Part shown: piece by piece, positions 3,751 through 37,107 of the stretch | How positions within the stretch are numbered: the stretch's first letter is position 1 | Layout: each line of letters begins with the position of its first letter | Assembly (NCBI GenBank): GCA_047495785.1 | Contig: JBLDXI010000025.1 | Coordinates: 1,674,001 to 1,738,000, forward strand | Direction: 5' to 3' | Source: Lepidodermella squamata | Taxonomy: Eukaryota; Animalia; Gastrotricha | Length of the DNA: 64,000 bases | Notes under the pieces: model-generated | Database searches by the model: none | The model's input: the letters and a program-made list of their open reading frames with translations, nothing else | What the model was told of the DNA's origin: nothing | Position numbers and translations under genes: made by a program

Positions 3751-6726
3751 ATGGCATCGCTCATGAGCCGTGCTGTAGCCGGTAGCCGTCTGCTGGCTGC
3801 GTCTGGTCGCCTCCAGTCTCAAGCTCGTTCTTTTTCATTCGGTTCGATATTCAAGCTACCTTAAATATTCCCAAAATAATTTTACCAAATTTTCTCCATA
3901 CAGAATTGAATGAAGAACAGAAGCAGTTCCAGGAGATCGCGCGCAAATTCTCGCGCGAAGAAATTTTGCCGAAAGCGGCTCACTACGACAAAACGGGCGA
4001 GTTCCCGAAGGAGCTGTTGAAGAAGGCGTGGGAAATCGGCCTCATCAACATGAGCATCCCGCAGGCGGCCGGCGGTCCTGCCCGCGGCGTCTTCGACGAA
4101 ATCGTCGTCGGCGAAGAACTCGCCTACGGCTGCACGGGCGTCTCAACCGCCCTCACCGGCACCGGCCTCGGCCAGACCCCGGTCATCCTCGCCGGTAACA
4201 AGGAACAACAGAAAAAGTACCTCGGCCGACTCATCGAGGAGCCCCTCATCGCCGCGTACTGCGTCACCGAACCCGGTTGCGGGTCGGATGTGGCCGGTAT
4301 TCGGACGACGGCCGTGAAAAAGGGTGACAAGTGGGTGCTCAATGGCCAGAAAATGTGGATCACGGGCGCCGGTCATGCCAACTGGTATTTCGTCCTCGCC
4401 CGGTCCGACCCGAACCCGAAGGCGTCGACCGGCAAGGCCTTCACGGCTTTCATCGTCGATCGCGATTCAAAGGGCGTCTCAGTCGGCCGCAAGGAGATCA
4501 ATATGGGCCAACGGGCGTCGGACACACGTGGCGTGACCTTTGAAGATGTTGAGGTGCCGAAGGAGAACGTGCTGGGCGCGGAGGGGTACGGCTTCAAGAT
4601 TGCGATGGGCGCGTTCGATGTCACGCGGCCGTTTGTTGCCATTGGCGCCGTTGGGCTGGCGCAGCGTGCCTTGGATGAGGCCACGAAATACTCGCTCGAA
4701 CGCAAGACCATGGGCAAGGCAATTTTCGAACATCAAGGTTTGTGCGACATTTAAACGTAATTTTTTAAAATTCGCTTGAAAAAAAACGAGTCAAATTAGC
4801 AGCTTCATTGTCAGTAACTGAGGGGCTTTTAGGGGTTTACTCATTCGAGCAAACTTTAAGGAAGTTTTTCCCGTCTCAGAATGGTTTCAAATTATTTTTT
4901 CAAAAATGTTCGCGATTTTACGTCACAAATTCCGACTGGCGCTTCGTATTCATTTCATGTTAAATGGAGCTAAATGTCCCTGAGAACGTGCTTCAGAATG
5001 GCAGAAACCCTAACTTGGAAAAGTCGTAGTAATAGTGCCACCGGTCGTGGGAACCCAAGTGCGTAACTAACGCCTCTTCTAAGATTATCGTAGCTTTCAA
5101 GGGCGGCAAATCATTCATGCGGATCATCAGCTCAGAATCCATGGCGTCGAACCTCAAGGGCCTCAGTGGATTCGCCACGGTTCCGTAAACGGAACCGAAA
5201 AACTCGGCAACCGATCACCGGCCAGGCTAGAGGCGAGGAACCGATACCGGTCTTCGTTCGTCCAGTATCGCTTCAAGCCAAGCGTTAGTTGCCTAGAATA
5301 TAGATAGATTTTCAAGAACGAGTGTTTCAAGGTTAGAATAACACTTGAGGAGTATTAGCTAAGTGAAGAGTTCAGCCGACATGGAGTCTTCTAGTTTGTT
5401 CGTATTGAGTTTGAGTCGACAGCAATTCTAGAGTTAGACAGTCTCATTTATTACGTACTCTGGTGAGCACTGTGAAATAGTCGAGAAGTTCGTCCTTTGC
5501 CGCGCAATTCTTAAAGATGGGTTCAAAATTGGTTTACCCGAGGTCATTATTTCGAAAACATACCTGCAAGCGATTGAACATCGTCGAGCCGCCGGAGTCA
5601 GCTGGCTCCAGGGCATGAAGCGGTGAACCCTGACTTTCGCTGCCTGCGGGCTCCCACAACGCCTATTGTATGGACATCGCTGCGTTCCTTCAATTCCATT
5701 CCCACTAGGCCCTAGACGAGGGCTACCCGGGTTACGATTACGCTCACCGGATTCTGGTTATGTTATCATATTCAGGGTTTGTGAAACGAGCAAGATTAGC
5801 CGTGTTGATTAAGCTATTCAATTGCAAAAAGAGAGATAGAATAAATTCTAAGAGAATAAACTGTATGGACTGTATCTGACGGTATATAACGCGCCAGGGT
5901 GGAAGTAGCCTTCCACCTGCTGAACCACCGGCTGATCGTCCAGCGCCAGGCCAACCGCATCGTCGCCGAACATGAGGTAAAACTCAAAAATGGGTTCTTG
6001 CGACATCAATTTTTCAAACCATACCCGCAGTGCTGAGAGACTTAGTGTCGGCTCACGGAAAAAGTAGCTGAAGTGGTCGCGACCGATTATGTGCGCCATT
6101 TGCAAAATGTGATGTACGCTCTAAGAGAAAACAGTAAAGTCATGCCGCCGATCGAACTACGTCTTTCAATTGAAAAAGCAAGAGTTTTTGAAATATTAAG
6201 GAAATTTGGAGTAAATAGCTGCAAATAAAGAAACAGCCCGTTTCAAAGAAATCGTATTCCATGAACCCTCTGGAGTAGTGGCATTTGATTCAGCAAGCGC
6301 ATAGTTCTGAGTAGCAAAAAATGGCTTCGCCAGCCCAGAAACTAGCTTGGGCGAGCTTTCGAGCTCAGAAAAAAACGTTATTAAAATTTAATTGGTTTAA
6401 TTTTAATTTAAAATATTTAAAATATTGCGTATGGAAATTAATTTGAAAAAAATGGAATTATAACCATTTATCATGACAAATTGTGGAAAATTCATGATTT
6501 AATTTTTTTAATTTGTTCTGTTTTTTCTAGCCGTTGCCTTCATGCTGGCTGACATGGCTATCGGCATCGAAGCGTCGCGCTTCTGCACGTACCGTGCCGC
6601 GTGGGAAATCGACCAGGGCCGCCGCAATACTTACTACGCGTCGATCGCCAAGGCGCTCGCCTCGGACGTGGCCATGAAGTCGGCGACCGATGCCGTGCAG
6701 GTGTTTGGCGGCGCCGGCTACAACAC

Positions 6727-6757
<31 letters not shown>

Positions 6758-6847
6758 GCCAAGATCTTCCAGATCTACGAAGGCACGTCGCAGATTCAGC
6801 GCCTCGTCATTTCGCGTTTCCTGTACGAAAAGGCCAAGTCGCAATAA
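3751..6847 (+). CDS. ACADM: Medium-chain acyl-CoA dehydrogenase, mitochondrial. Exons 3751-3841, 3904-4737, 6531-6847
   Basis: Arg/Ser-rich transit peptide, then [34 protein letters not shown], and [25 protein letters not shown] with the MCAD-type catalytic Glu in IYEGT. Confidence 0.96.
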
Positions 6848-7382
6848 AATCGAATAGCCGAAAAATTGAGAACTCACCGAAACTTATGGCGTATTTATGG
6901 CTGATGTCTCTCTCAATGATTGATTTTAAAATGAGAAATTTAGAGCCGCAATTTTCATCACAGTTCTTTATAAAAATGGCAAGATTATGTGAATAAATTT
7001 TTGCCACGATTTCGGCGTCCATCAAACTGTATAATTTGGTTTCGGTTCGCAATTTTTGGTTGCAAAATAAAACTCGAACGGCTTGTCACAGCAACTTTTT
7101 TGTCAACCTACGTTGCATGGATGTTCAATTTCAGGGATTTCAGGGATGGAAGTCATCCCTAACAGCATTTCAAATCTGACAAAGGCAATTTTTTAGCTGT
7201 ATTTTGTTACACAATGGGCCTTGCCTTAAGCGAAATCAAACTTCGAATACCCTATAAATCTATGTTACAGCTTCCAGCATTCAATAATTTGAGGCTTCGA
7301 GGATCATCGTGATGGATCTCGCAGATCTCACCCCAAACACATGTAGCCGAAGTCACCCCAAACACATGTTAGATGCTGATGG

Positions 7383-7686: not shown

Positions 7687-8298
7687 TTTTTTACGGTATG
7701 AAATACGATTTTCAGATTTTAGAATTGATCGTGAGAAATTCAAAGAAATTACAATAAAAAGTTATGTAATTTCCGGATAATTTCTGTATGTTTTACAGAA
7801 GAAAAATGCTTAGAGCACCCTGCTTTTTAGGGTTTTTCCTACTTTGCCAGCCAGATGAATTTTTAAAAATAGGCAAAAACAGAAATAAAGAGGAGCTCTT
7901 AGGCTATCGAATGCCTCTTTCCGTAAGTCCGGACGATTTGACTTTGATTTATGGCTAATTTTAAGTAACCCAGACACCCGCCGGAATTAGGGAGCGGGGT
8001 GCCCAAATTTTCGGCCACACCATCCAGATAACATAATAACAGAAGTTTGGTATCGTTTCAAAAAGCTGAATTTGAAAACCGCCTTTGTTGCTTCACCTGT
8101 GAGCTTTTTCTTGACGACTTGTTGCCTGAAACTCTAGTGTTTATGGTAACAAAGCACTCGAGAAGCGACATGAGCCCCCTCGCCCGCATATGGAATTATT
8201 TATTTGGGATCACGTGCTTGAAAAAAATCACATACAGATTGGCTCGGCAATGCAAATTTCTTGAGTTGTGTGCGAAAAAAGAGCTGCACAGCACTTAA

Positions 8299-8803
8299 CA
8301 CTTTAAATGCCAAAAATAGACTGCGAGGTCCGATATTTGGGTCTAATTCCTGGGTCTGTCAAAAAGTCTTTTATTTCGGGTCAACGATGCGTCGAGGGGC
8401 AAAATGCCTGACGGCAAAGTGTAGGCCATGACCTGGCGGTTCTTTTGACACCGAATTCGGGGCCACAAGGTCTGAGCAGGTCATTGAAAATGACAGTGAA
8501 AAAACGTCGAAAATTTTGGATTAGAGCCAAAAATCAGACCCAAGAATTGGACCTAATTATTAGACCCAGATTATGGCGCAACAATCGAAATTTCACTGTT
8601 TTTCAAGTTTGATTTCTGTGCGTTCCTTGAAGTCTTTGGCCCCAAATTCGGTGTCAAAAGAACCGCCAGGTCATGGCCTACACTTTGCCGTCAGGCATTT
8701 GGCCCCTCGACGCATCGTTGACCCGAAATAAAAGACTTTTTGACAGACCCAGGAATTAGACCCAAATATCGGACCTCGCAGGCTATTTTTGGCATTTAAA
8801 GTG
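8299..8803. mobile_element. piggyBac-type non-autonomous foldback element (MITE), 505 bp
   Basis: ~170-bp near-perfect TIRs starting CACTTTAAATGCCAAAAATAG, flanked by TTAA at 8295-8298 and 8804-8807. No coding capacity. Confidence 0.92.
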
Positions 8804-9439
8804 TTAATGTCCAAATTTCGGCCGGTGGACGAGGTTAGATCACAGTGGCCGAAATTAGGAATTCCTGCTCTATTATCGCACCAAATTTTTCACGCAGTAC
8901 TTATCACTTCCCGGGTAAAATTTTCCCAGCACTGTAAACGCCTGCAACGCCATGCACGAAAATGCACGAGAATGAAAAAGCTTATAACACCTAGAAAGTT
9001 GCGTCCCTGACATCTCGGCCAATAATTATTTGTATTTCGGCAACTCCGTCTGAATGTGAGGCTTCTTTGGGAATACGTAATTTGATATCCGATATCCCGA
9101 TATAACCTGAACTCCAAAAGCAGAAAAAACACTCGATTAGTAGCATAATTTCCTCATTTTATTCAAGACATTTTTCTGCCTCAAACTGGGTCGTATCAAA
9201 ATTTTGAATGATTATTGTGAGTTAAACATTACAATAAAAAACAGAGAAGAACATGTATTAAAACAAAACTGCGTCATTTTTTACATAATTTTCAAAGAAC
9301 TTGTCAAAAACACGGAACACACTATATAAAGTTAAAACAGGTCGAAGGTGAGGACGTGCAAGTTTTGAAGTTGGGATGTAAGTGCGAGAAGCAAAATCTC
9401 CAGATTTTTCACGGTGACCTACTAACAAAAAATAATTCG

Positions 9440-9925
9440 CTAATCGGCATTGACCAGGAGCGTGTTGAGCAGGTCTAGCTGGCCCGAATACGCGGCAATG
9501 TGCGTCGCCGACCAGCCGTTACGGTTCGAAATGCGAACATTGGCACCAAGGCGCAGCAACGCCTCCGCAATGTGGCATATGGCCTTGACGGACGAGTTGT
9601 CCTGACTATGATGACTACTACTGCTATCGAAGTTTTCATCGTCATCAGCACACAACCGCGAGATAGGGGATGGCACTTGCGACGATGAGTTTGAATTCGG
9701 CGATGTAGATGACGGTGATTCATCGCTGATAGCTACGTCGTCGGATGAAGAGCGAGGTGAGGTGATTTCAGCGGCTTCGGCCGCCAACCGGGTCAGCAGC
9801 GTGTGCCCGTCGAGTTCGGACACGCCGCTTATAACCGAGTACTTGCTCGTTGTATCACCGGCCGCGTCCGTTCGAATTCGCTCGATCAACATCGACCACT
9901 GATCAATCATCGACGACGTAGACAT
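9440..9925 (-). CDS. NRARP: NRARP-like (Notch-regulated ankyrin repeat) protein with a Ser-rich insertion
   Basis: C-terminal LLRLGANVRISNRNGWSATHIAAYSGQLDLL resembles NRARP LVKFGADIRLANRDGWSALHIAAFGGHQDIV. Single coding exon, with a 5'UTR splice acceptor at ~9967. The upstream CSL-site cluster supports the call independently. Confidence 0.7.
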   Translation of the reverse strand: MSTSSMIDQWSMLIERIRTDAAGDTTSKYSVISGVSELDGHTLLTRLAAEAAEITSPRSSSDDVAISDESPSSTSPNSNSSSQVPSPISRLCADDDENFDSSSSHHSQDNSSVKAICHIAEALLRLGANVRISNRNGWSATHIAAYSGQLDLLNTLLVNAD

Positions 9926-10010
9926 AGCGTTAACAACTGCGAATTTTTAATAAATTTTGCAAAGTCCTAGAAAATTAAGAAAAAATTTAATTGGGAATTG
10001 TTCTGGGGCA

Positions 10011-13000
10011 TGTGAGAAATATTAAAATTTAGGTCATTTCACGTCGATTGTGATGAGCCCTGTAAAACTTTTGGGGCCGAACGTTACAGTGAAAAAGCCC
10101 ATCAGAGAACGAACAAGTACCCCTTGTTCGATAAATTTTTTCTATATGAACTAAAAGGCGCTAAAAATGAGCGACTTCGAAGCTGTAGACCAAAAATTTC
10201 ATGATGTGAAAATACATTTTGGAAAAAAATGTTGTCCCAGTTTTCCAACTTATAACATCAAACTCAGCAGCAATATGAGCGTAGGCGGGATGAAATGTGT
10301 AAAAATGGGAATTCAGTCGAATAATAAAATCTGAAATAATAAATTTTAAGGTGGACGCGGACTGGGCGAGCATATGGTTTTAGTGCGCTCGCACCTGGTG
10401 TGGCTAGTGAGGCGCGACGCGGCCGGATAATCCCGGTTTAGCGGGCACTCTAAAAAATAATACGCGCTACATTTCTCGTGCGCGACAGTCAGATGGTGTG
10501 TGTAATAACATGAAGAGTGCTAAGCATAACGCAGCCGCCTGATGCTGATAATGACGAGCTTAGCTTGGTGACGCGCAGCGAGAAAACAGGCGCTTAACGC
10601 ACACGCGTTCCCATGCCGCCGCGCAAAACACGCGACATCATTATTTTTGCGGCGCGGCGGTGGCTTTGAGAGAGCGAGATGACGATGATGATGTCTCATC
10701 ATGTCAATAATCATAACCACAACAACAACACTAAAACAACACAGGACTTTCCGCTACTGCGCTATGGTTACAACTATATATATATACTATATAATGCCTG
10801 GGGTAATAATTTTTGCGTGTGGCCTATTCCCACGCACGTAGTAGCCCGAAATTTTAGCGGCTTCTAAACGTAGGAGTCATTATCCGTGGGAACTGCATTC
10901 AGTTAAGTGGAGCCTCCAATATAGGGTGCCGAGATGTGTAACTGAGCTGCTGTTTGTACACGCTACGTGTAATGTACAAAAACTACCTATATATTACACA
11001 CCAGGCACTCACTCAACGACACCTGCAAGAAATCGCCATAGCAACGATTTGTCGAGTGCGAGAAAACCACAAGTAACCTGCTGTAGGCTGAAAAATCGTG
11101 ACTTAAACCCGGAGAATACCGAGCGCCTGAAACCGGTATTTTCGGTTATTGATAACGAAACCCGGTTCTGCGGTGATAAACACGCGGAACCAGGCCGTGT
11201 TTGCCTACGCGTCACCGATGATGGGAAAGCCTGTTGAGGCCGGTCGACTAACAAATTGGGGTTGCGCAACGCGGTACCTTTGAAGCCAGCAGGTGCTGGG
11301 CATGATACAACGGCGCTGGCAAACATCGCTTCCACAAACACTGAAACCATCTATAGGCGGAGGATAGATCAATAAAAATGCTGGGCCAATCTCAGCTAAG
11401 ATGAAATTTTTGAAAAAATGTAAAAAAATCTAGGGCAAAAATGTCTTCCAGACTTCGAAACGCAAAAATATTGGGGTTTCATGGTACAGGTTTTGGACTT
11501 CGATAGCAGTGATGCGCGCCTATCAGGTAACGTGCAAGTACCCCTTGAGCGATAATTAACGCAGTGCGCGAAAAATTGCAATTTTTTCTGGTAGTTATTG
11601 GTGTTTGTTTACTTCGACGGTACCTAATTAGCAAAAAACTGTTTACAAAGCGGGCAGCAATATATCATAGGAGGCTGGCCTTTATCGCTTTGGCACTTTG
11701 AAATTTATTGTTGTGAGAAGACATCGTAGGCGGCGGCTATCTCTCGCTCGCTCGCGGCCTCAACCTGTCAAGTTTTTAGGAGCGGCCGCAAGTTTTTGCA
11801 CGCAGTAAGCGTGGGCCTGAGTGGCGGCGAACATGAGAAACACGAGAGACGTCATTTATTAATATTATTACTTACTATACTTAATAATAATAACACCACA
11901 TATTAACTGAGAGAGAGCGATAATAGCTGTCTACAACAAGCCATATTATTATGTGGGAAACGAGCGCTTTTACGCTGGGAATGTGAATCATTGCAACAAA
12001 GCGGCGTAATAACATAACGACGCGTGAGAAAAAATTCGGTCCAAATAAATAAAAAGTAATAAATTGAGGCGACCGACATTCGTCTCTGGATTTCGCCGCT
12101 GATAGTGCGCTTCTCGAAGCGTAATTATCATTAGGTAATTGATGTTATAACGCATCCCAAGGCCATGGGAATCATTGAGTGCGCGCAATAAAAAAATAAA
12201 GTTCGAACTTGCGCATTTCTCACACACACCCACCTTAAATTGGCGTGCAATAAAATCTGGAAAAACGTATTTTCCAGCCTATAAATTCGAGTTGGTCGCA
12301 ACGAAACTAGCAATTTTTCATCTGGCTCAAACATTTGGAAAAAAAATATCTGACAAGTGGTACTTGATCGATAGTGCATAAGCATATTTGAGGGTGGTCT
12401 GAAAATTAATAATAACTACAGAAATAATGCAAATTGACTCCAAATTGCCTGAATCGTGAAATTTTGTCACTCCCTGGTATTAAGTTGGAAAATCCTGTCG
12501 ATCGAAAAATGTAGCGAAGATGATATGTTTTTACGGCGGTGTAATAATGCCTTGATGCGCGTCTAATATAGTCGATGTTTGTATAAATAGCGACGACGGC
12601 AGACTTCCGTGGGAACGTCGCCCGTCTGGCCTAGAGAGGCGCACGCATTGTGAGCGGCTCAGCTCGCCCGCAAAACGGGACACGCATGTCACCCATGTAT
12701 TTGCGTGTAACGTGTCACTTACAAGAGCCCTTGCCGCTATGTTCGAACGGTGACGAGCGATCATCGTTAGGACGCCTTTTTCAAACAACAGCGCCCTGCC
12801 TATATAAAGGCTCCGCTGTGTATTAGCGGCGATGCGGAATGCCCGCGCGGTGAATGTTCGGGGTTATTGCATGTATGAATGCGTAAAACTGTAATGCTGT
12901 GTTATATTATTGGTATTAATTTATTTCCCTATCGTCTCACGCGCGCGTGATAGGGCCCTAAGCGCGCGCAGGTGGGGGCGTCGTGGGAAAGAATTCGAAT

Positions 13001-13013
13001 TGACTTTCCCATT
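10011..13013. promoter_or_regulatory. Cluster of CSL/Su(H) binding sites (YGTGRGAA) upstream of the NRARP-like gene
   Basis: Perfect sites at 10011, 10827 (rc), 10885, 11712, 11952, 12023, 12217 (rc), 12608 and 12982. GCAGGTG E-boxes at 11020 (rc), 11289 and 12968. Confidence 0.75.
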
Positions 13014-14446
13014 TCGCTATGTGGGGCGCGTGTACCACCGCTGGTAATAATGATAATATTAAATAATAATTATTAAACTACAACATGATTTTCTCGGCAG
13101 AATAAATACTTGTCGCGGCTGGTGTGATAGCACAAAGTGGTGATATAAAAATTTGTGCAACGGCAAACAACGCGAAATGGCTTTCAAGGGGTATGCTAAT
13201 TAGGTGATATCGGTGTGAACGCGAAACCTCAGCGGGGCCGCGGCTCAGGTCAACGGTGTTTAGGTTTTGTTGCCGAGACCTACTATACTAATATCGCATT
13301 TCCGGATTCCGCGCGCGGGAGTAAAGCTGCGGGCGAAACCGCACAATCTAAAAATGTTAGCTAATGGCTATAGTCTTTGAGCAGCTGATTTCCTTTCGTC
13401 AAGTTCACATTACGAGTGGTATTATTTGATGAATTGAATAAAAGAATCCAGAAAACAGATTCATTCCAGATTCATGAAAAAAATTTAAATTATATACGAA
13501 AGCAAGTTGATCAATGCCATTTTTTTTCGAAAAATATGCGCAACTATCAATGGAAATGAGATAAAATTCCAAAAAGTGGAAGTAATTAGCTTGGCATCTC
13601 CGTTAATTTTAATTTTAATTTAATTATACCAGGGCTGAAAAATAGTTTTCAAAACTTACTGAGAAACTACTTCCGGATTTCAAAATTTGAAATTAAAATT
13701 TTTCAATTTTTTTTCAAAATTTCAAAATTAAGCTTGGAAAAAATTGAATCCCCAAATGAACCAAATGAGATACAATTCTTAAGATTTAGTTAGTATTTAG
13801 TTAGCCCAGTATCTCTGTTTTTTTTGTATTCAACAAAATTAACGGTGATCACCAATTTTCGGGATAATGAACTCTCGGCGGATTATTTTGGAAATTTTTC
13901 ATGCCGCTAATCAATTATATCAAGTAAATCCGTAAATCAAGTCTCATTCGATCGATTCAACAGCATGTCCTATTCTGGGCTTATCAGCCGCTAATTAGGC
14001 GTCGCAGCCTCCTTAAATGTTGTCCCGACTGTCATGATTTTATTGGTAATATCTTGAAGTCGCTTCTTTGTTTATCATACATACGAAGTCTAGCAGTCGT
14101 GGTTAAACATAGAATAGCGGAAGAATAAACAAAAATCACGCGCAAAGTGCGTATTAAGGAAGCGCGAAGATGCGCATCGACGCGCAGCGCAAACAGCAGT
14201 ATATTGCATTATCGTAGTATTAAAATAATCACCGCCGGGCGTGTTTATTAACGGCTATTAAACGCCGAACTCGGCGCACCAAAATCTCAGACAAGTTGCC
14301 AATTCCAATGTAAGTATCGAGGCATGCGATGCTTAAAATAAATACTGAAAAATACATCGATAAATGATAACATTATACATACTTGCAACAAAAATAGCTA
14401 TTATTTATATCATTTATCAAGTTTTTTTTGCTGAGAAAAAGAAAAA

Positions 14447-16754
14447 ATGGCTGCATATCACGGTTGGGTGATTTTGCTAACATTAGTCACCCTATGTCGC
14501 CAGATTTGTTCCCACGGTGCCTCTGACCAGGGTGAACAGGAGAATTTCGTGTTCAGACAGGCGTATCCAACAAGAATGGGTACATTACCACCCGAGGACG
14601 AGCTGATCGGGCATGAAGTAGAAATTCCTGATCACCTTTTCGACACAACAACGAAACGTCAAATTCTACGATCACCACCGCCGAGATCCTCGCGGCCTTA
14701 TTCATACATAAATCACACCCAATCTGCATATGGTAAAATTGTGAAAAACCTTGAGTTTTGTTAAATTTGTAATTTTTCAAGATTTACACCACAAATTGTT
14801 TCGTGATTACTACATCCGTCGGCTGGTGAAACCTATATCTCGAGATCCAAGAACAGGCTACACCAATGGGTCATTGGAGGTTAAAATTGGCCTCGCTCTC
14901 ATTCAGCTAATTGATATTGTAAAAATTCCAAAATTATTAAAAAATTCCTACAATTATTTTAATTAAGGATGAGCTCAACCAAGTAATGACCACGAATGTT
15001 TGGCTATACCAAGGTAATTTTTTGCCCGATTTTTTTTTTACATCAAAACTGATTACTTTTTTTCTAACAGAATGGCACGATCATCATTTGTCTTTCAGTA
15101 CGTCGTTAATTAAAAAATTGAAAAAGATTCGATTTCAATTTTTTCCGCAGATCCGGAGGAGTATAGTGGAATCGATAAGATGGACGTGCCAGCAAATATG
15201 ATATGGCTACCAGGTAGCCTTTCTTGAGAGATTAATTTCTTGAAAATAATTATTTTTGCAGACATTGTGCTTTATAACTCGGCCGATGGTCTCTACGCAG
15301 TTCCACCTTGTTTAAGGGTTCGACTACGGCACGATGGGACAATTCAATGGGACCCTCCTATAATTTACAAGTCCTTCTGCCAAATCGATATTCAGTGAGA
15401 AAAAAATACAACAACTTAAAAAATAATTGCTGATTATTCTTTTATAGGTGGTTTCCATTTGATAGACAGGTTTGCTTCAGGGTTTTTAATTAATTAAAAA
15501 TAAGTGGGATATTTTTTAAGAATTGTTCGATGAAGTTCGGCTCATGGACTTACGACGGTCGTACAATTAATTTGATGCATAAAGAGCAGAAAGAATTCAG
15601 CGGCGACGTTCAAATTATCGGCGAGGGTGCGGTTGATTTCGAAAATTTCCGAGAAAACACCGAATGGACCGTGACGGCGGCTAGTGCTCAGCGAACCGTG
15701 TTCAAATACTCGTGCTGCCCAACGCCTTACATTGATGTCACTTTTTACCTGGTCGTTACTAGGTGAGAATTGAAAAATCAATAAAATAAATTCTTAGTGT
15801 TTTTCATCCTAGGAAACCACTTTTCATTGTCATAAATCGTAATTTTGAATATTTAAATTTTCGTGAAATTAATAATTTTATTTCAGTGCTATTTCCATGC
15901 TTTCTCATATCTTTTCTGTCCGTTTTTGTCTTCTATTTGCCGACGCAAAGTGGCGAGAAAATGTCCCTATCCGTGTCGATTCTTGTCGCCTTGATTATGT
16001 TCTTCTTGGTGGTTTTCGAAAAAATCCCAGCTACGTCACTCGCGCTGCCATTATTCGCAAAATTTCTCATATTCACACTCGTTCTCGTCACGCTTAGTAT
16101 CGTGCTGAATGTAGCTATCATCCGAATTCACTGGATGGCTATCGAATATGCGGCTATGCCAAGGTGGATTAAAAGAATCTTCATCGAAACAGTAAGAACT
16201 TAAACATTTAATTGAAAAAAATAAAATTGAAATTTTTTTCAGTTGGCCCCAAAATTATTGGATCCTGACCCGACTGGCCCATTCATGCAATCGATCGTAG
16301 CGGCAAAAAAAGCCGCGGCTAATGCAGCAGTGGCCAAAAAAACCGTCCCATGTCCAAGAAGCCCATCAATATTGCGGAGTCGCAGCCCGTCGCAGAGGCC
16401 GCGGAGTCCAGCATTTGGCCGCGTGCCAAGAAGTGCGACGCTCGAGCGCATCGTCGAAGAAAAACTGCCAAAAGCGCTGACGCGTTTCGAACGCGAACTC
16501 ATCGACGAGTTCACCGAGCAGTCGAATAAAATTTACGATTTTATTCGCAAGAAAAACATGACATTATCGGTAAGAATTTTAATTTTGAAATTTTGAAAAA
16601 TATTTTCAAATTCCCGTAGATGCAAGAAGAGTGGCGAGTCGTTGCGCTTGTTTTCGACAAAATATTTTTCTACATTTTCGTCCTCGTTTTTTCGACCGGA
16701 ACGGTATGGATATTCTGGCAGGGTGTTTTATCAACATTTTTCTACGAAGACTGA
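14447..16754 (+). CDS. Nicotinic acetylcholine receptor alpha-type subunit, 12 exons (14447-14732, 14782-14918, 14968-15013, 15071-15097, 15151-15213, 15262-15394, 15448-15469, 15521-15762, 15813-15838, 15887-16191, 16243-16569, 16620-16754)
   Basis: Signal peptide, IWLPDIVLYNSA, Cys-loop CQIDIQWFPFDRQNC, loop B GSWTYDG, vicinal cysteines KYSCCPTPY (alpha type), cation-type GEK before M2, and M4 EEWRVVALVFDKIF. Confidence 0.95.
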
Positions 16755-35988: not shown

Positions 35989-37107
35989 TGATTTGTTCTC
36001 AGGCTTGTGGTTAATGTCGATATGAGGTGATGCTCGGTTGAGTGAGCCGATATCTTCATCTCTCAAAACTACCATAGTTGCAAATCGACCGTGATGTTAT
36101 GCTTGCCAAGCTGACTTCGAGCGATTGCAGCACAGTGAATGTAATGATTTGAACCAGCAGGGATTCGGGTATTTTATCGCAACGATCTGTCCGAACGAGG
36201 GTGATGAAGTGATTTATCTGGAAAGCATTGATCAGCATCAAGTGTAGTGCGGCCACCATCGGAATGAACATCGACTGTATTCCGGCAATCGCCGTTATAG
36301 CGATAATTGCACTCCTACTATGCTTATTAGTCATGTAGCAGTAGCGATCGTTCGCGGGAGCGCTCTTTCCAGCTTTTTTCTAGCCCATGTCTGCGTATTG
36401 TTTTCTTAAGGTTATACTGCTGTGCGCAATAACCATGATTGATAGCGTTACTTACACACGACTTACTATTATTTCTGTTCATCATCTATCATCTCTTGTA
36501 TTTTCCCTTGGGTATTATTCGTGTTTTCTTCTATGCTATTTCAACGAAGGAGTCGTGGATTCTGTAAATGTGAGAGATCATTCAATCCTGGATTCGTGAC
36601 AAAATTTGAGTGAAATGACTCATTATGGGATAACTCTAGAACATTCCTTGCGGGGTAGAAGTCATTCATGAAATGGAATGTTGTAAAACCCTACAAGACA
36701 TGTCTAGTTTTAAGTGTTTTTCTAATTTAATCCTAGGATTGACCTCGTGAGCTCGTTTACGATGAAAAGTTTCATTCATGAATATCCGCCAACGACAAAC
36801 TGTCACAAATAAGGTCGCTGACACTAGGATTTCGTGTGGATTCCTTGCCAAACGGCTGATCTGAATTCACTGACCGTTGAGTCACGGGCGCAACGAGGCG
36901 AAACTGGATGCTATTTTCGATTCGCATGACCTAAAATAAGAAAAAAAGCGAGGGTGCAAATTGATTTCATTATCCGGGAAATATTGCTGCAACCGTGAAG
37001 TTAGATCCCTACGCTAGTTCAAAATGTTTAAAGGGCTTCAGTATATAACCGGCTTGCATATATAACTACTCAGTTTTCTCACATTCTCACATTCATAGCT
37101 GCGAACG

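What the first reader, a model, noticed from the sequence alone, without database searches (positions are those of the whole stretch)
10011..12989. Nine perfect CSL/Su(H) sites in ~3 kb: a Notch-response enhancer cluster
YGTGRGAA occurs at 10011, 10827, 10885, 11712, 11952, 12023, 12217, 12608 and 12982. At equal base frequencies, about 0.4 sites are expected per 3 kb on both strands. This is the largest gene-free interval in the window and lies directly upstream of the NRARP-like gene. It suggests the Notch-to-Nrarp feedback loop known from vertebrates is wired directly in this invertebrate.
Basis: partly seen in the sequence, partly recalled or inferred. Interest (0 to 1): 0.8.

Follow-up and report, generated by a model that had tools for sequence, protein, structure and literature searches.

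The report
Conserved Notch-site cluster upstream of Nrarp-like gene
A 3-kb gene-free stretch next to a small Nrarp-like ankyrin gene holds nine perfect binding motifs for CSL, the Notch-pathway transcription factor. A distantly related species has a similar cluster at the same gene, so this is most likely a real Notch-response switch, an expected kind of element in an unstudied animal group.

Summary
All nine YGTGRGAA motifs are at the stated coordinates. Shuffles that keep local dinucleotide content give 0.3-0.4 motifs, and none of 2000 reached 9. No repeat family produces the sites, and their flanks carry no shared sequence.

The key new result is a second species. The only homologue found (48% identical protein; synonymous sites saturated; intergenic DNA unalignable) sits on metagenome contigs with the same divergent neighbour, a Cys-loop ion-channel gene. 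There, 7 of the locus's 9 motifs lie within 1.5 kb upstream of the orthologue (0.28 expected). In an unbiased k-mer test, TGGGAA and CGTGGGAA are the top non-simple words enriched in both intergenic regions.

The flanking gene encodes 161 residues in one exon and is transcribed. Its last ankyrin repeat is 52% identical to human NRARP residues 74-104 and keeps W85 and A92, the residues NRARP uses to dock on Notch-RBPJ.

One head-to-head paired site with a 16-nt spacer and an adjacent GCAGGTG E-box lies at 12968-13012.

CSL binding, Notch dependence and the choice of target gene (Nrarp-like, channel or both) are inferred, not shown. Notch-dependent Nrarp expression is already published for the annelid Platynereis. 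I file this as a new member of a known kind, of moderate interest.

The parts
9969..14446 (.). Divergent intergenic region between the Nrarp-like gene (minus strand) and the Cys-loop channel gene (plus strand); candidate Notch-response cis-regulatory region
   Evidence: 9 strict and 12 relaxed (TGRGAA) CSL-type motifs. No RNA contigs, no conserved ORF, no Rfam match.
10011..10018 (+). CSL motif TGTGAGAA, 93 nt upstream of the Nrarp-like ATG
10827..10834 (-). CSL motif CGTGGGAA; one half of the proximal inverted pair
   Evidence: The same TTCCCACG...CGTGGGAA arrangement is seen in L001 at 9595/9659.
10885..10892 (+). CSL motif CGTGGGAA; other half of the proximal inverted pair (50 nt between the two 8-mers)
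11712..11719 (+). CSL motif TGTGAGAA
11952..11959 (+). CSL motif TGTGGGAA
12023..12030 (+). CSL motif CGTGAGAA (overlaps a CACGCG box)
12217..12224 (-). CSL motif TGTGAGAA
12608..12615 (+). CSL motif CGTGGGAA
12982..13012 (.). Head-to-head paired site of SPS type: CGTGGGAA, 16-nt spacer, TTCCCAT
   Evidence: The only TGRGAA-N13-19-TTCYCA pair in the 64-kb window; sequence read
12968..12974 (+). E-box GCAGGTG, 7 nt before the paired site
9440..9925 (-). Nrarp-like gene: single exon, 161 codons plus stop
   Evidence: ORF; Pfam ankyrin; orthologue P0001; 16/31 identical to human NRARP 74-104 with W85 and A92 kept
9184..9968 (-). Transcribed span of the Nrarp-like gene seen in contigs of run X2
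   Evidence: Contigs cover 9184-9643 and 9671-9968. The same run shows a GT..AG splice in the channel gene, so it is RNA. The 5' end carries 19 nt that are absent from the window.
14447..14737 (+). First exon of the divergent Cys-loop ligand-gated channel gene (alternative or additional target)
   Evidence: spliced RNA contigs; orthologue beside P0001 in L001-L004

Best explanation
The interval is a cluster of binding sites for the CSL protein (Su(H)/RBPJ/LAG-1), the DNA-binding effector of Notch signalling. It acts as a Notch-response regulatory region for the adjacent Nrarp-like gene. Proposed mechanism: without signal, CSL sits on the YGTGRGAA sites with co-repressors. When Notch is cleaved, its intracellular domain and Mastermind join CSL on these sites, perhaps as a cooperative dimer on the paired site at 12982-13012, and switch on the Nrarp-like gene. 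The encoded small ankyrin protein keeps the tryptophan and alanine that human NRARP uses to dock on the Notch-RBPJ complex. It would therefore bind the active complex and damp it, closing a negative feedback loop. Shown here: strong motif excess; no repeat origin; the same excess at the orthologous gene in a species with saturated synonymous divergence; transcription of the gene; conservation of NRARP-specific residues. Inferred: CSL occupancy, Notch dependence, which gene is driven, and the inhibitory action of the protein.
For: The window has 9 motifs against 0.40 expected in 9926-14446, and 0 of 2000 shuffles reach 9. Density is 8-fold above the rest of the window. In L001, 7 of the locus's 9 motifs lie at 8191-9666, upstream of the orthologue at 10001-10375, against 0.28 expected and 0 of 2000 shuffles. 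The two intergenic regions do not align. Third codon positions are only 34-37% identical in the conserved C-terminus, so the motifs are not leftover shared sequence. TGGGAA is the best non-simple 6-mer and CGTGGGAA the best multi-copy 8-mer enriched in both regions. Only the 8-mer is conserved among the 16 sites, with C>T at position 1, G>A at position 5 and an A bias after GAA, as in the published CSL consensus. An SPS-type pair with a 16-nt spacer sits next to an E-box. A proximal inverted pair of perfect CGTGGGAA sites is present in both species. The gene is transcribed. Its last repeat is 52% identical and 81% similar to NRARP 74-104 and keeps W85 and A92. Nrarp is a canonical direct Notch target in mammals (PMC7529455) and is Notch-dependent in an annelid.
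Against: There are no binding, chromatin or perturbation data. Only one independent second species was found, since L001-L004 are the same species. The paired site is single, absent from L001 and not significant on its own (about 0.1-0.3 expected per window). In L001 the cluster spans almost the whole interval between the two divergent genes, so the target gene is ambiguous. Motif density could only be compared with 64 kb plus 19 kb, not genome-wide. I did not check whether this genome encodes CSL, Notch or Mastermind. NRARP orthology rests on a 31-residue comparison; the protein has a 35-70 residue serine-rich insert that NRARP lacks, and the structure model was poor (pLDDT 51).
Confidence: 0.6

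Rival explanations
1. The CSL-site cluster is real and Notch-responsive, but its main target is the divergently transcribed Cys-loop ligand-gated channel gene, or both genes share it as a bidirectional module.
For: The Nrarp-like/channel gene pair is kept head-to-head in both species, while the other flank differs: acyl-CoA dehydrogenase in the window, a BTB-Kelch gene in L001. The channel genes are orthologous, with 82% identity in the membrane region. In L001 the sites lie 544-2012 nt from the channel ATG and 342-1810 nt from the Nrarp-like ATG. The SPS-plus-E-box module in the window is nearer the channel ATG (about 1.45 kb) than the Nrarp-like ATG (about 3.06 kb).
Against: In the window, the 1.4 kb nearest the channel gene has no strict site, while sites reach to 93 nt from the Nrarp-like ATG. 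Nrarp is a known Notch target in vertebrates and an annelid. I know of no Notch-regulated Cys-loop channel (my own knowledge).
Confidence: 0.17
2. The conserved TGGGAA-containing motif is bound by a factor other than CSL (for example a Rel/NF-kB-, STAT- or zinc-finger-type protein), and the region is an enhancer unrelated to Notch.
For: TGGGAA alone is also enriched, with 12 and 8 copies. Several extra sites are ATGGGAA or TTCTCATTCCCA composites. No binding data exist, and CSL was not shown to be present in this genome.
Against: 9 of the 16 strict sites are exactly CGTGGGAA, the highest-affinity CSL sequence (established knowledge). The GTG upstream of GGAA is part of the enriched word (CCCACG/CGTGGG and CGTGGGAA). 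No information extends beyond the CSL 8-mer, so Rel or STAT palindromes are not present. The neighbouring gene is Nrarp-like with its Notch-RBPJ contact residues intact.
Confidence: 0.12
3. The cluster is a chance or compositional effect, or the trace of a repeat, with no function.
For: The region has patchy GC-rich islands and a positive GC and AT skew. Background could be sampled over only 83 kb.
Against: 0 of 2000 local dinucleotide shuffles reach the observed count in either species. No repeat family contains the sites. The excess recurs independently at the orthologous locus despite unalignable DNA.
Confidence: 0.02

Closest known systems
Vertebrate NRARP regulatory region (canonical direct Notch/RBPJ target, negative-feedback gene)
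   Same: CSL-type motifs lie next to a gene for a small ankyrin protein that carries the NRARP docking residues W85 and A92. The proposed logic is the same: Notch induces its own inhibitor.
   Different: There are many more motifs here: 9 strict over 3 kb, and 7 over 1.5 kb in the relative. By my own recollection, not checked here, only a few promoter sites are described for mouse Nrarp. The protein is longer (161 and 124 aa against 114) because of a serine-rich insert. The regulatory DNA is shared with a divergent channel gene. Nothing has been tested experimentally.
Platynereis dumerilii Nrarp (annelid)
   Same: An invertebrate Nrarp whose expression depends on Notch signalling; it is lost with gamma-secretase inhibitors (PMC5356439, PMC13172424).
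   Different: For Platynereis the evidence is expression after drug treatment, and the passages I read report no cis-regulatory sites. Here the evidence is cis-regulatory sequence only, with no perturbation data.
Drosophila E(spl)-complex / vertebrate Hes1 Su(H) paired sites (SPS, 'SPS + proneural A-box' code)
   Same: Head-to-head CSL sites with a 16-nt spacer and a GCAGGTG E-box beside them (12968-13012). Homotypic clustering of high-affinity CGTGGGAA sites.
   Different: The target is not a Hes/E(spl) bHLH gene. The second half-site is the weaker ATGGGAA. The paired site is not found in the related species, and it lies about 3 kb from the Nrarp-like ATG. SPS spacing rules and the A-box code are cited from established knowledge, not tested here.

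Membership tests
CSL/Su(H)-type Notch-response element | Matches to the CSL consensus YGTGRGAA, including high-affinity CGTGGGAA | tested here: met
   9 strict sites, 4 of them exactly CGTGGGAA, in the window; 7 strict sites, 4 exactly CGTGGGAA, in L001
CSL/Su(H)-type Notch-response element | Site density well above local background and not caused by repeats | tested here: met
   0 of 2000 shuffles in both species; 8-fold over the rest of the window; no repeats; genome-wide background not available
CSL/Su(H)-type Notch-response element | Evolutionary conservation of the sites or of the cluster | tested here: met
   The cluster is kept at the orthologous gene although the DNA is unalignable and synonymous sites are saturated. 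A proximal inverted CGTGGGAA pair is kept. Only one independent species was available.
CSL/Su(H)-type Notch-response element | Su(H) paired site: head-to-head sites with a 15-17 bp spacer | tested here: inconclusive
   One at 12982-13012 with a 16-nt spacer; none in the L001 cluster; about 0.1-0.3 expected by chance per window (and arithmetic)
CSL/Su(H)-type Notch-response element | CSL occupancy and Notch-dependent activity | not testable with these tools
   Needs EMSA or ChIP, gamma-secretase inhibitor treatment, or reporter assays
CSL/Su(H)-type Notch-response element | The genome encodes CSL, Notch and Mastermind | not tested
   Only this 64-kb window is readable. Earlier scan notes on 'Notch' name only Notch-like domain proteins.
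NRARP (Notch-regulated ankyrin repeat protein) | Small protein that ends right after its last ankyrin repeat (the C-terminal repeat must abut Notch ANK1) | tested here: met
   161 aa, and 124 aa in P0001. The stop codon comes 4 residues after the last repeat's alignment to NRARP residue 104 of 114. A serine-rich insert of variable length is not found in human NRARP.
NRARP (Notch-regulated ankyrin repeat protein) | Interface residues W85 and A92 of the third repeat | tested here: met
   GWSATHIAAYSG aligns to NRARP GWSALHIAAFGG, so W138 matches W85 and A145 matches A92. Both are invariant in P0001.
NRARP (Notch-regulated ankyrin repeat protein) | Closer in sequence to NRARP than to generic ankyrin repeats | tested here: inconclusive
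   52% identity to NRARP over 31 aa, against about 39% to the best designed consensus repeat (counted by eye). NRARP did not reach the top 60 of the PDB search, which multi-repeat proteins dominate. Pfam, the Atlas and the word search give only 'ankyrin'.
NRARP (Notch-regulated ankyrin repeat protein) | Three-repeat ankyrin fold | tested here: inconclusive
   The AlphaFold2 model built from a 2-sequence alignment has mean pLDDT 50.7. Its helix pattern is compatible, but it is too uncertain to search with.
NRARP (Notch-regulated ankyrin repeat protein) | Induced by Notch; binds NICD-CSL and lowers signalling | not testable with these tools
   Needs experiments

The most novel reading that the evidence does not exclude
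The CSL-site cluster is a shared, bidirectional Notch-response module. It drives both the Nrarp-like feedback inhibitor and the neighbouring Cys-loop ligand-gated ion channel, and this sharing has kept the two genes head-to-head across a divergence deep enough to saturate synonymous sites. That would make a neurotransmitter-gated channel a direct Notch target. It would also give the first cis-regulatory evidence that the Notch-Nrarp loop is directly wired in a non-vertebrate lineage.
Probability: 0.2. Interest if true: 0.55.

Novelty: new member of a known kind. Interest (0 to 1): 0.45.

Why it matters
If confirmed, direct CSL control of Nrarp is not a vertebrate invention. It would be an old part of the Notch circuit, kept at the level of cis-regulatory site clusters even where the surrounding DNA has been completely rewritten. 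It would also provide a compact, sequence-defined Notch reporter region (3 kb here, 1.5 kb in the relative) for a microscopic invertebrate group that has no Notch tools. It is also a clean case of binding-site cluster conservation without sequence alignment. For Notch specialists the result is expected rather than surprising.

Tried and rejected
- Repeat origin: rejected by direct, inverted and tandem repeat searches and by the flank information content of the 16 sites.
- Hidden gene or RNA in the interval: no cross-species conserved ORF (tblastn of all stop-free segments of 30 or more codons), no Rfam match at E<=0.1, no RNA contigs.
- Positional conservation: blastn with word size 7 found no significant alignment of the two intergenic regions. 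The best non-simple match is a 14-mer with E=0.73.
- More orthologous loci: two scans of JGI metagenome contigs, two word-index protein searches and an exact-sequence look-up gave only P0001.
- NRARP membership by other routes: the PDB sequence search is swamped by multi-repeat ankyrins, the ESM Atlas gives only generic ankyrin clusters, and the AlphaFold2 model is too poor to use, so I ran no fold search. I did not run the exhaustive representative search, because multi-repeat ankyrin proteins would fill its 150 rows.
- The 19-nt 5' extension of the mRNA as an upstream exon: it is not present anywhere in the 64-kb window, even with 3 mismatches.
- Orientation bias of the sites: 12 of 16 point the same way relative to the gene, which is not significant.
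- Organism identity was not tested here.

Full report
**Observation.** A pattern search finds YGTGRGAA 23 times in the window, against 7.6 expected from whole-window shuffles.
- Dinucleotide-preserving shuffles of the local sequence give 0.31 sites for 10001-13000 and 0.40 for the whole intergenic interval 9926-14446. None of 2000 shuffles reaches 9.
- Density is 2.0 per kb inside the interval and 0.24 per kb outside.
- No 3-kb window that avoids the interval has more than three sites.
- Repeat searches find no family that carries the sites.
- When the 16 strict sites of the two species are stacked, only the 8-mer itself carries information: C>T at the first base, G>A at the fifth, and a mild A preference after GAA.
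- Some motifs outside the interval are by-products of coding sequence. Those at 4027 and 6600 spell Ala-Trp-Glu in the acyl-CoA dehydrogenase gene, and the one at 14509 lies in exon 1 of the channel gene.

**Surroundings.** The interval separates two divergently transcribed genes.
- On the minus strand, 9925 down to 9443 is a single 161-codon ORF ending in ankyrin repeats.
- On the plus strand, a spliced Cys-loop ligand-gated channel gene starts at 14447.
- Contigs of run X2 contain a GT..AG splice junction in the channel gene, so they are RNA-derived. They cover 9184-9643 and 9671-9968, so the ankyrin gene is transcribed. No X2 contig lies between 9969 and 14566.
- The 5' contig continues beyond 9968 with 19 nt (CGAATTTGATTTGTGTCTA on the mRNA strand) that occur nowhere in the window, even with three mismatches. 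The genome has a pyrimidine tract followed by AG at that point.
- Earlier notes of this scan report a 33-nt spliced leader in this genome. The mRNA is therefore probably trans-spliced and its real transcription start lies further upstream, at an unknown position.
- The interval has no Rfam match and no ORF conserved with the related species.

**A second species.** The word-index protein search found a single relative, P0001 (124 aa, 48% identity overall), on four near-identical ENA metagenome contigs, L001-L004.
- The N-terminal helix and the C-terminal 46 residues are nearly invariant between the two proteins, while a serine-rich middle segment differs in length.
- In the conserved C-terminus only 34% of third codon positions agree, and only 15 of 41 identical residues share their third base. 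Synonymous sites are therefore saturated.
- blastn with 7-nt words finds no significant alignment between the two intergenic regions.
- The gene order is nevertheless the same. P0001 is head-to-head with a Cys-loop channel gene that is 82% identical to the window's in the membrane region. The other flank differs.
- In L001, 7 of the locus's 9 YGTGRGAA motifs lie at 8191-9666, which is 342-1810 nt upstream of the P0001 start. The expectation is 0.28, and 0 of 2000 shuffles reach 7.
- I also ran an unbiased comparison of all 6-, 7- and 8-mers enriched in both intergenic regions over their own flanks. After AAT-type simple sequence, TGGGAA is the top 6-mer and CGTGGGAA the top multi-copy 8-mer.
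- Both species have a proximal inverted pair of perfect sites, TTCCCACG...CGTGGGAA, with 50 and 56 nt between them.
- A cluster kept while the surrounding DNA has turned over completely is what selection on the sites themselves would produce. This is the strongest evidence here, but it rests on one independent comparison.

**Site architecture.** At 12982-13012 a CGTGGGAA faces a TTCCCAT across a 16-nt spacer. This is the head-to-head geometry of Su(H) paired sites, which bind dimers of Notch transcription complexes (established knowledge; the concept is also described in PMC7529455). A GCAGGTG E-box lies 7 nt before it. It is the only such pair in the window. About 0.1-0.3 would be expected by chance, and the related species has none in its cluster, so I treat it as suggestive only.

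**Is the gene an Nrarp?** Pfam, the ESM Atlas and the PDB sequence search report only generic ankyrin repeats.
It matched chain 6py8_B, 'Notch-regulated ankyrin repeat-containing protein' (114 aa), at residues 74-104 with 64.5 bits, which validates the probe.
- The window protein is 16/31 identical and 25/31 similar to that segment.
- The shared residues include several that depart from the ankyrin consensus: R, NR, GWSA instead of GxTP, and HIAA.
- The structural study of NRARP names W85 and A92 of this repeat as the key contacts with RBPJ and NOTCH1. W85E abolishes binding and feedback inhibition (bioRxiv 10.1101/645937).
- Both residues are present in the window protein (W138, A145) and in P0001.
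- As in NRARP, the protein ends just after this repeat, which the stacking mode on Notch ANK1 requires.
- Against full membership: the serine-rich insert, the weak overall similarity and a poor structure model (pLDDT 50.7).
- I regard it as a probable, divergent Nrarp orthologue.

**Mechanism proposed.** CSL occupies the YGTGRGAA sites. Notch cleavage brings the intracellular domain and Mastermind onto them and activates the Nrarp-like gene. Its product docks on the CSL-Notch complex through the conserved Trp and Ala surface and damps signalling.
- Shown: motif excess, its independence from repeats, recurrence at the orthologue, transcription of the gene, and retention of the docking residues.
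- Inferred: binding, Notch dependence, target choice and inhibitory function.

**Rivals.**
- The channel gene, alone or together with the Nrarp-like gene, could be the target. In L001 the cluster fills the space between the two genes, and the pair is kept together in both species.
- A different factor that recognises TGGGAA cannot be excluded without binding data. However, the enriched word includes the CSL-specific CGTG prefix and nothing beyond the CSL core.
- Chance or composition is effectively excluded within the sequence available.

**Comparison with what is known.** NRARP is a canonical direct Notch target and feedback inhibitor in mammals (PMC7529455; 10.1101/645937). In the annelid Platynereis, Nrarp is part of the Notch gene set and its expression is lost under gamma-secretase inhibitors (PMC5356439; PMC13172424). 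The loop is therefore not confined to vertebrates. The passages I read report no CSL sites at an invertebrate Nrarp. Reviews of invertebrate and lophotrochozoan Notch pathways that I searched do not mention rotifers or gastrotrichs. This makes the finding a new member of a known kind.

**Organism.** I did not identify the organism. Other agents of this scan call it probably a rotifer or a gastrotrich.

**Limits.**
- Background density could be judged only on 64 kb plus 19 kb.
- Only one second species was found, despite two metagenome scans and two protein searches.
- The reads were assembled contigs, so they give no transcript ends or expression levels.

Noticed in passing
window 9940-9990 (minus strand): The Nrarp-like mRNA contig of run X2 carries a 19-nt 5' extension (CGAATTTGATTTGTGTCTA). 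It is absent from the whole window and is joined at a ttttctAG acceptor about 40 nt before the ATG. It is probably the 3' part of this animal's spliced leader.
   Followed up: partly
window 8295-8807: A perfect foldback: two 171-nt arms, 98% complementary, separated by 171 nt. It lies in the gene-poor stretch downstream of the Nrarp-like gene and looks like a MITE or foldback transposon.
   Followed up: partly
window 12830-12843 (minus) and L001 about 8217-8230 (plus): The 14-mer GGCATTCCGCATCG is identical in both species, in the same gene-relative orientation, and lies inside both CSL clusters. It is unique in the 64-kb window and contains a TEAD/Scalloped-like CATTCC core. It was found by an all-against-all blastn (E=0.73), so it is only a lead.
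   Followed up: partly
window 10097-10134 and 11518-11555: A 38-nt element (GCCCATCAGAGAACGAACAAGTACCCCTTGTTCGATAA) is repeated at 82% identity inside the intergenic region. The word CAAGTACC occurs 3 times there (0.04 expected) and once in L001.
   Followed up: no
window 10854, 13896, 13981 and nearby: The word GCCGCTAA/TTAGCGGC occurs 4 times in the intergenic region (0.04 expected) and once in L001. It may be a second factor's motif.
   Followed up: no
window 11856-11898, 13030-13077; L001 7983-8041: AAT/TAATAA simple-sequence tracts flank GC-rich blocks in the intergenic regions of both species, and these are the top shared enriched k-mers. They could be microsatellite or homeodomain-type sites.
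   Followed up: no
window 37076-37091 (minus): Two directly abutting TGTGAGAA motifs (TTCTCACATTCTCACA) lie far from the cluster. I did not examine their context.
   Followed up: no
window 9443-9925 vs L001 10001-10375: The Nrarp-like protein has a serine-rich, low-complexity insert between its first helix pair and the conserved C-terminal repeats. It is about 37 residues longer in the window species, so this segment evolves fast between two strongly constrained ends.
   Followed up: partly
window 3906-6850 vs L001 11165-13263: Only the Nrarp-like/channel pair is syntenic between the two species. The other neighbour is an acyl-CoA dehydrogenase gene here and a BTB-BACK-Kelch gene in the relative.
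   Followed up: partly
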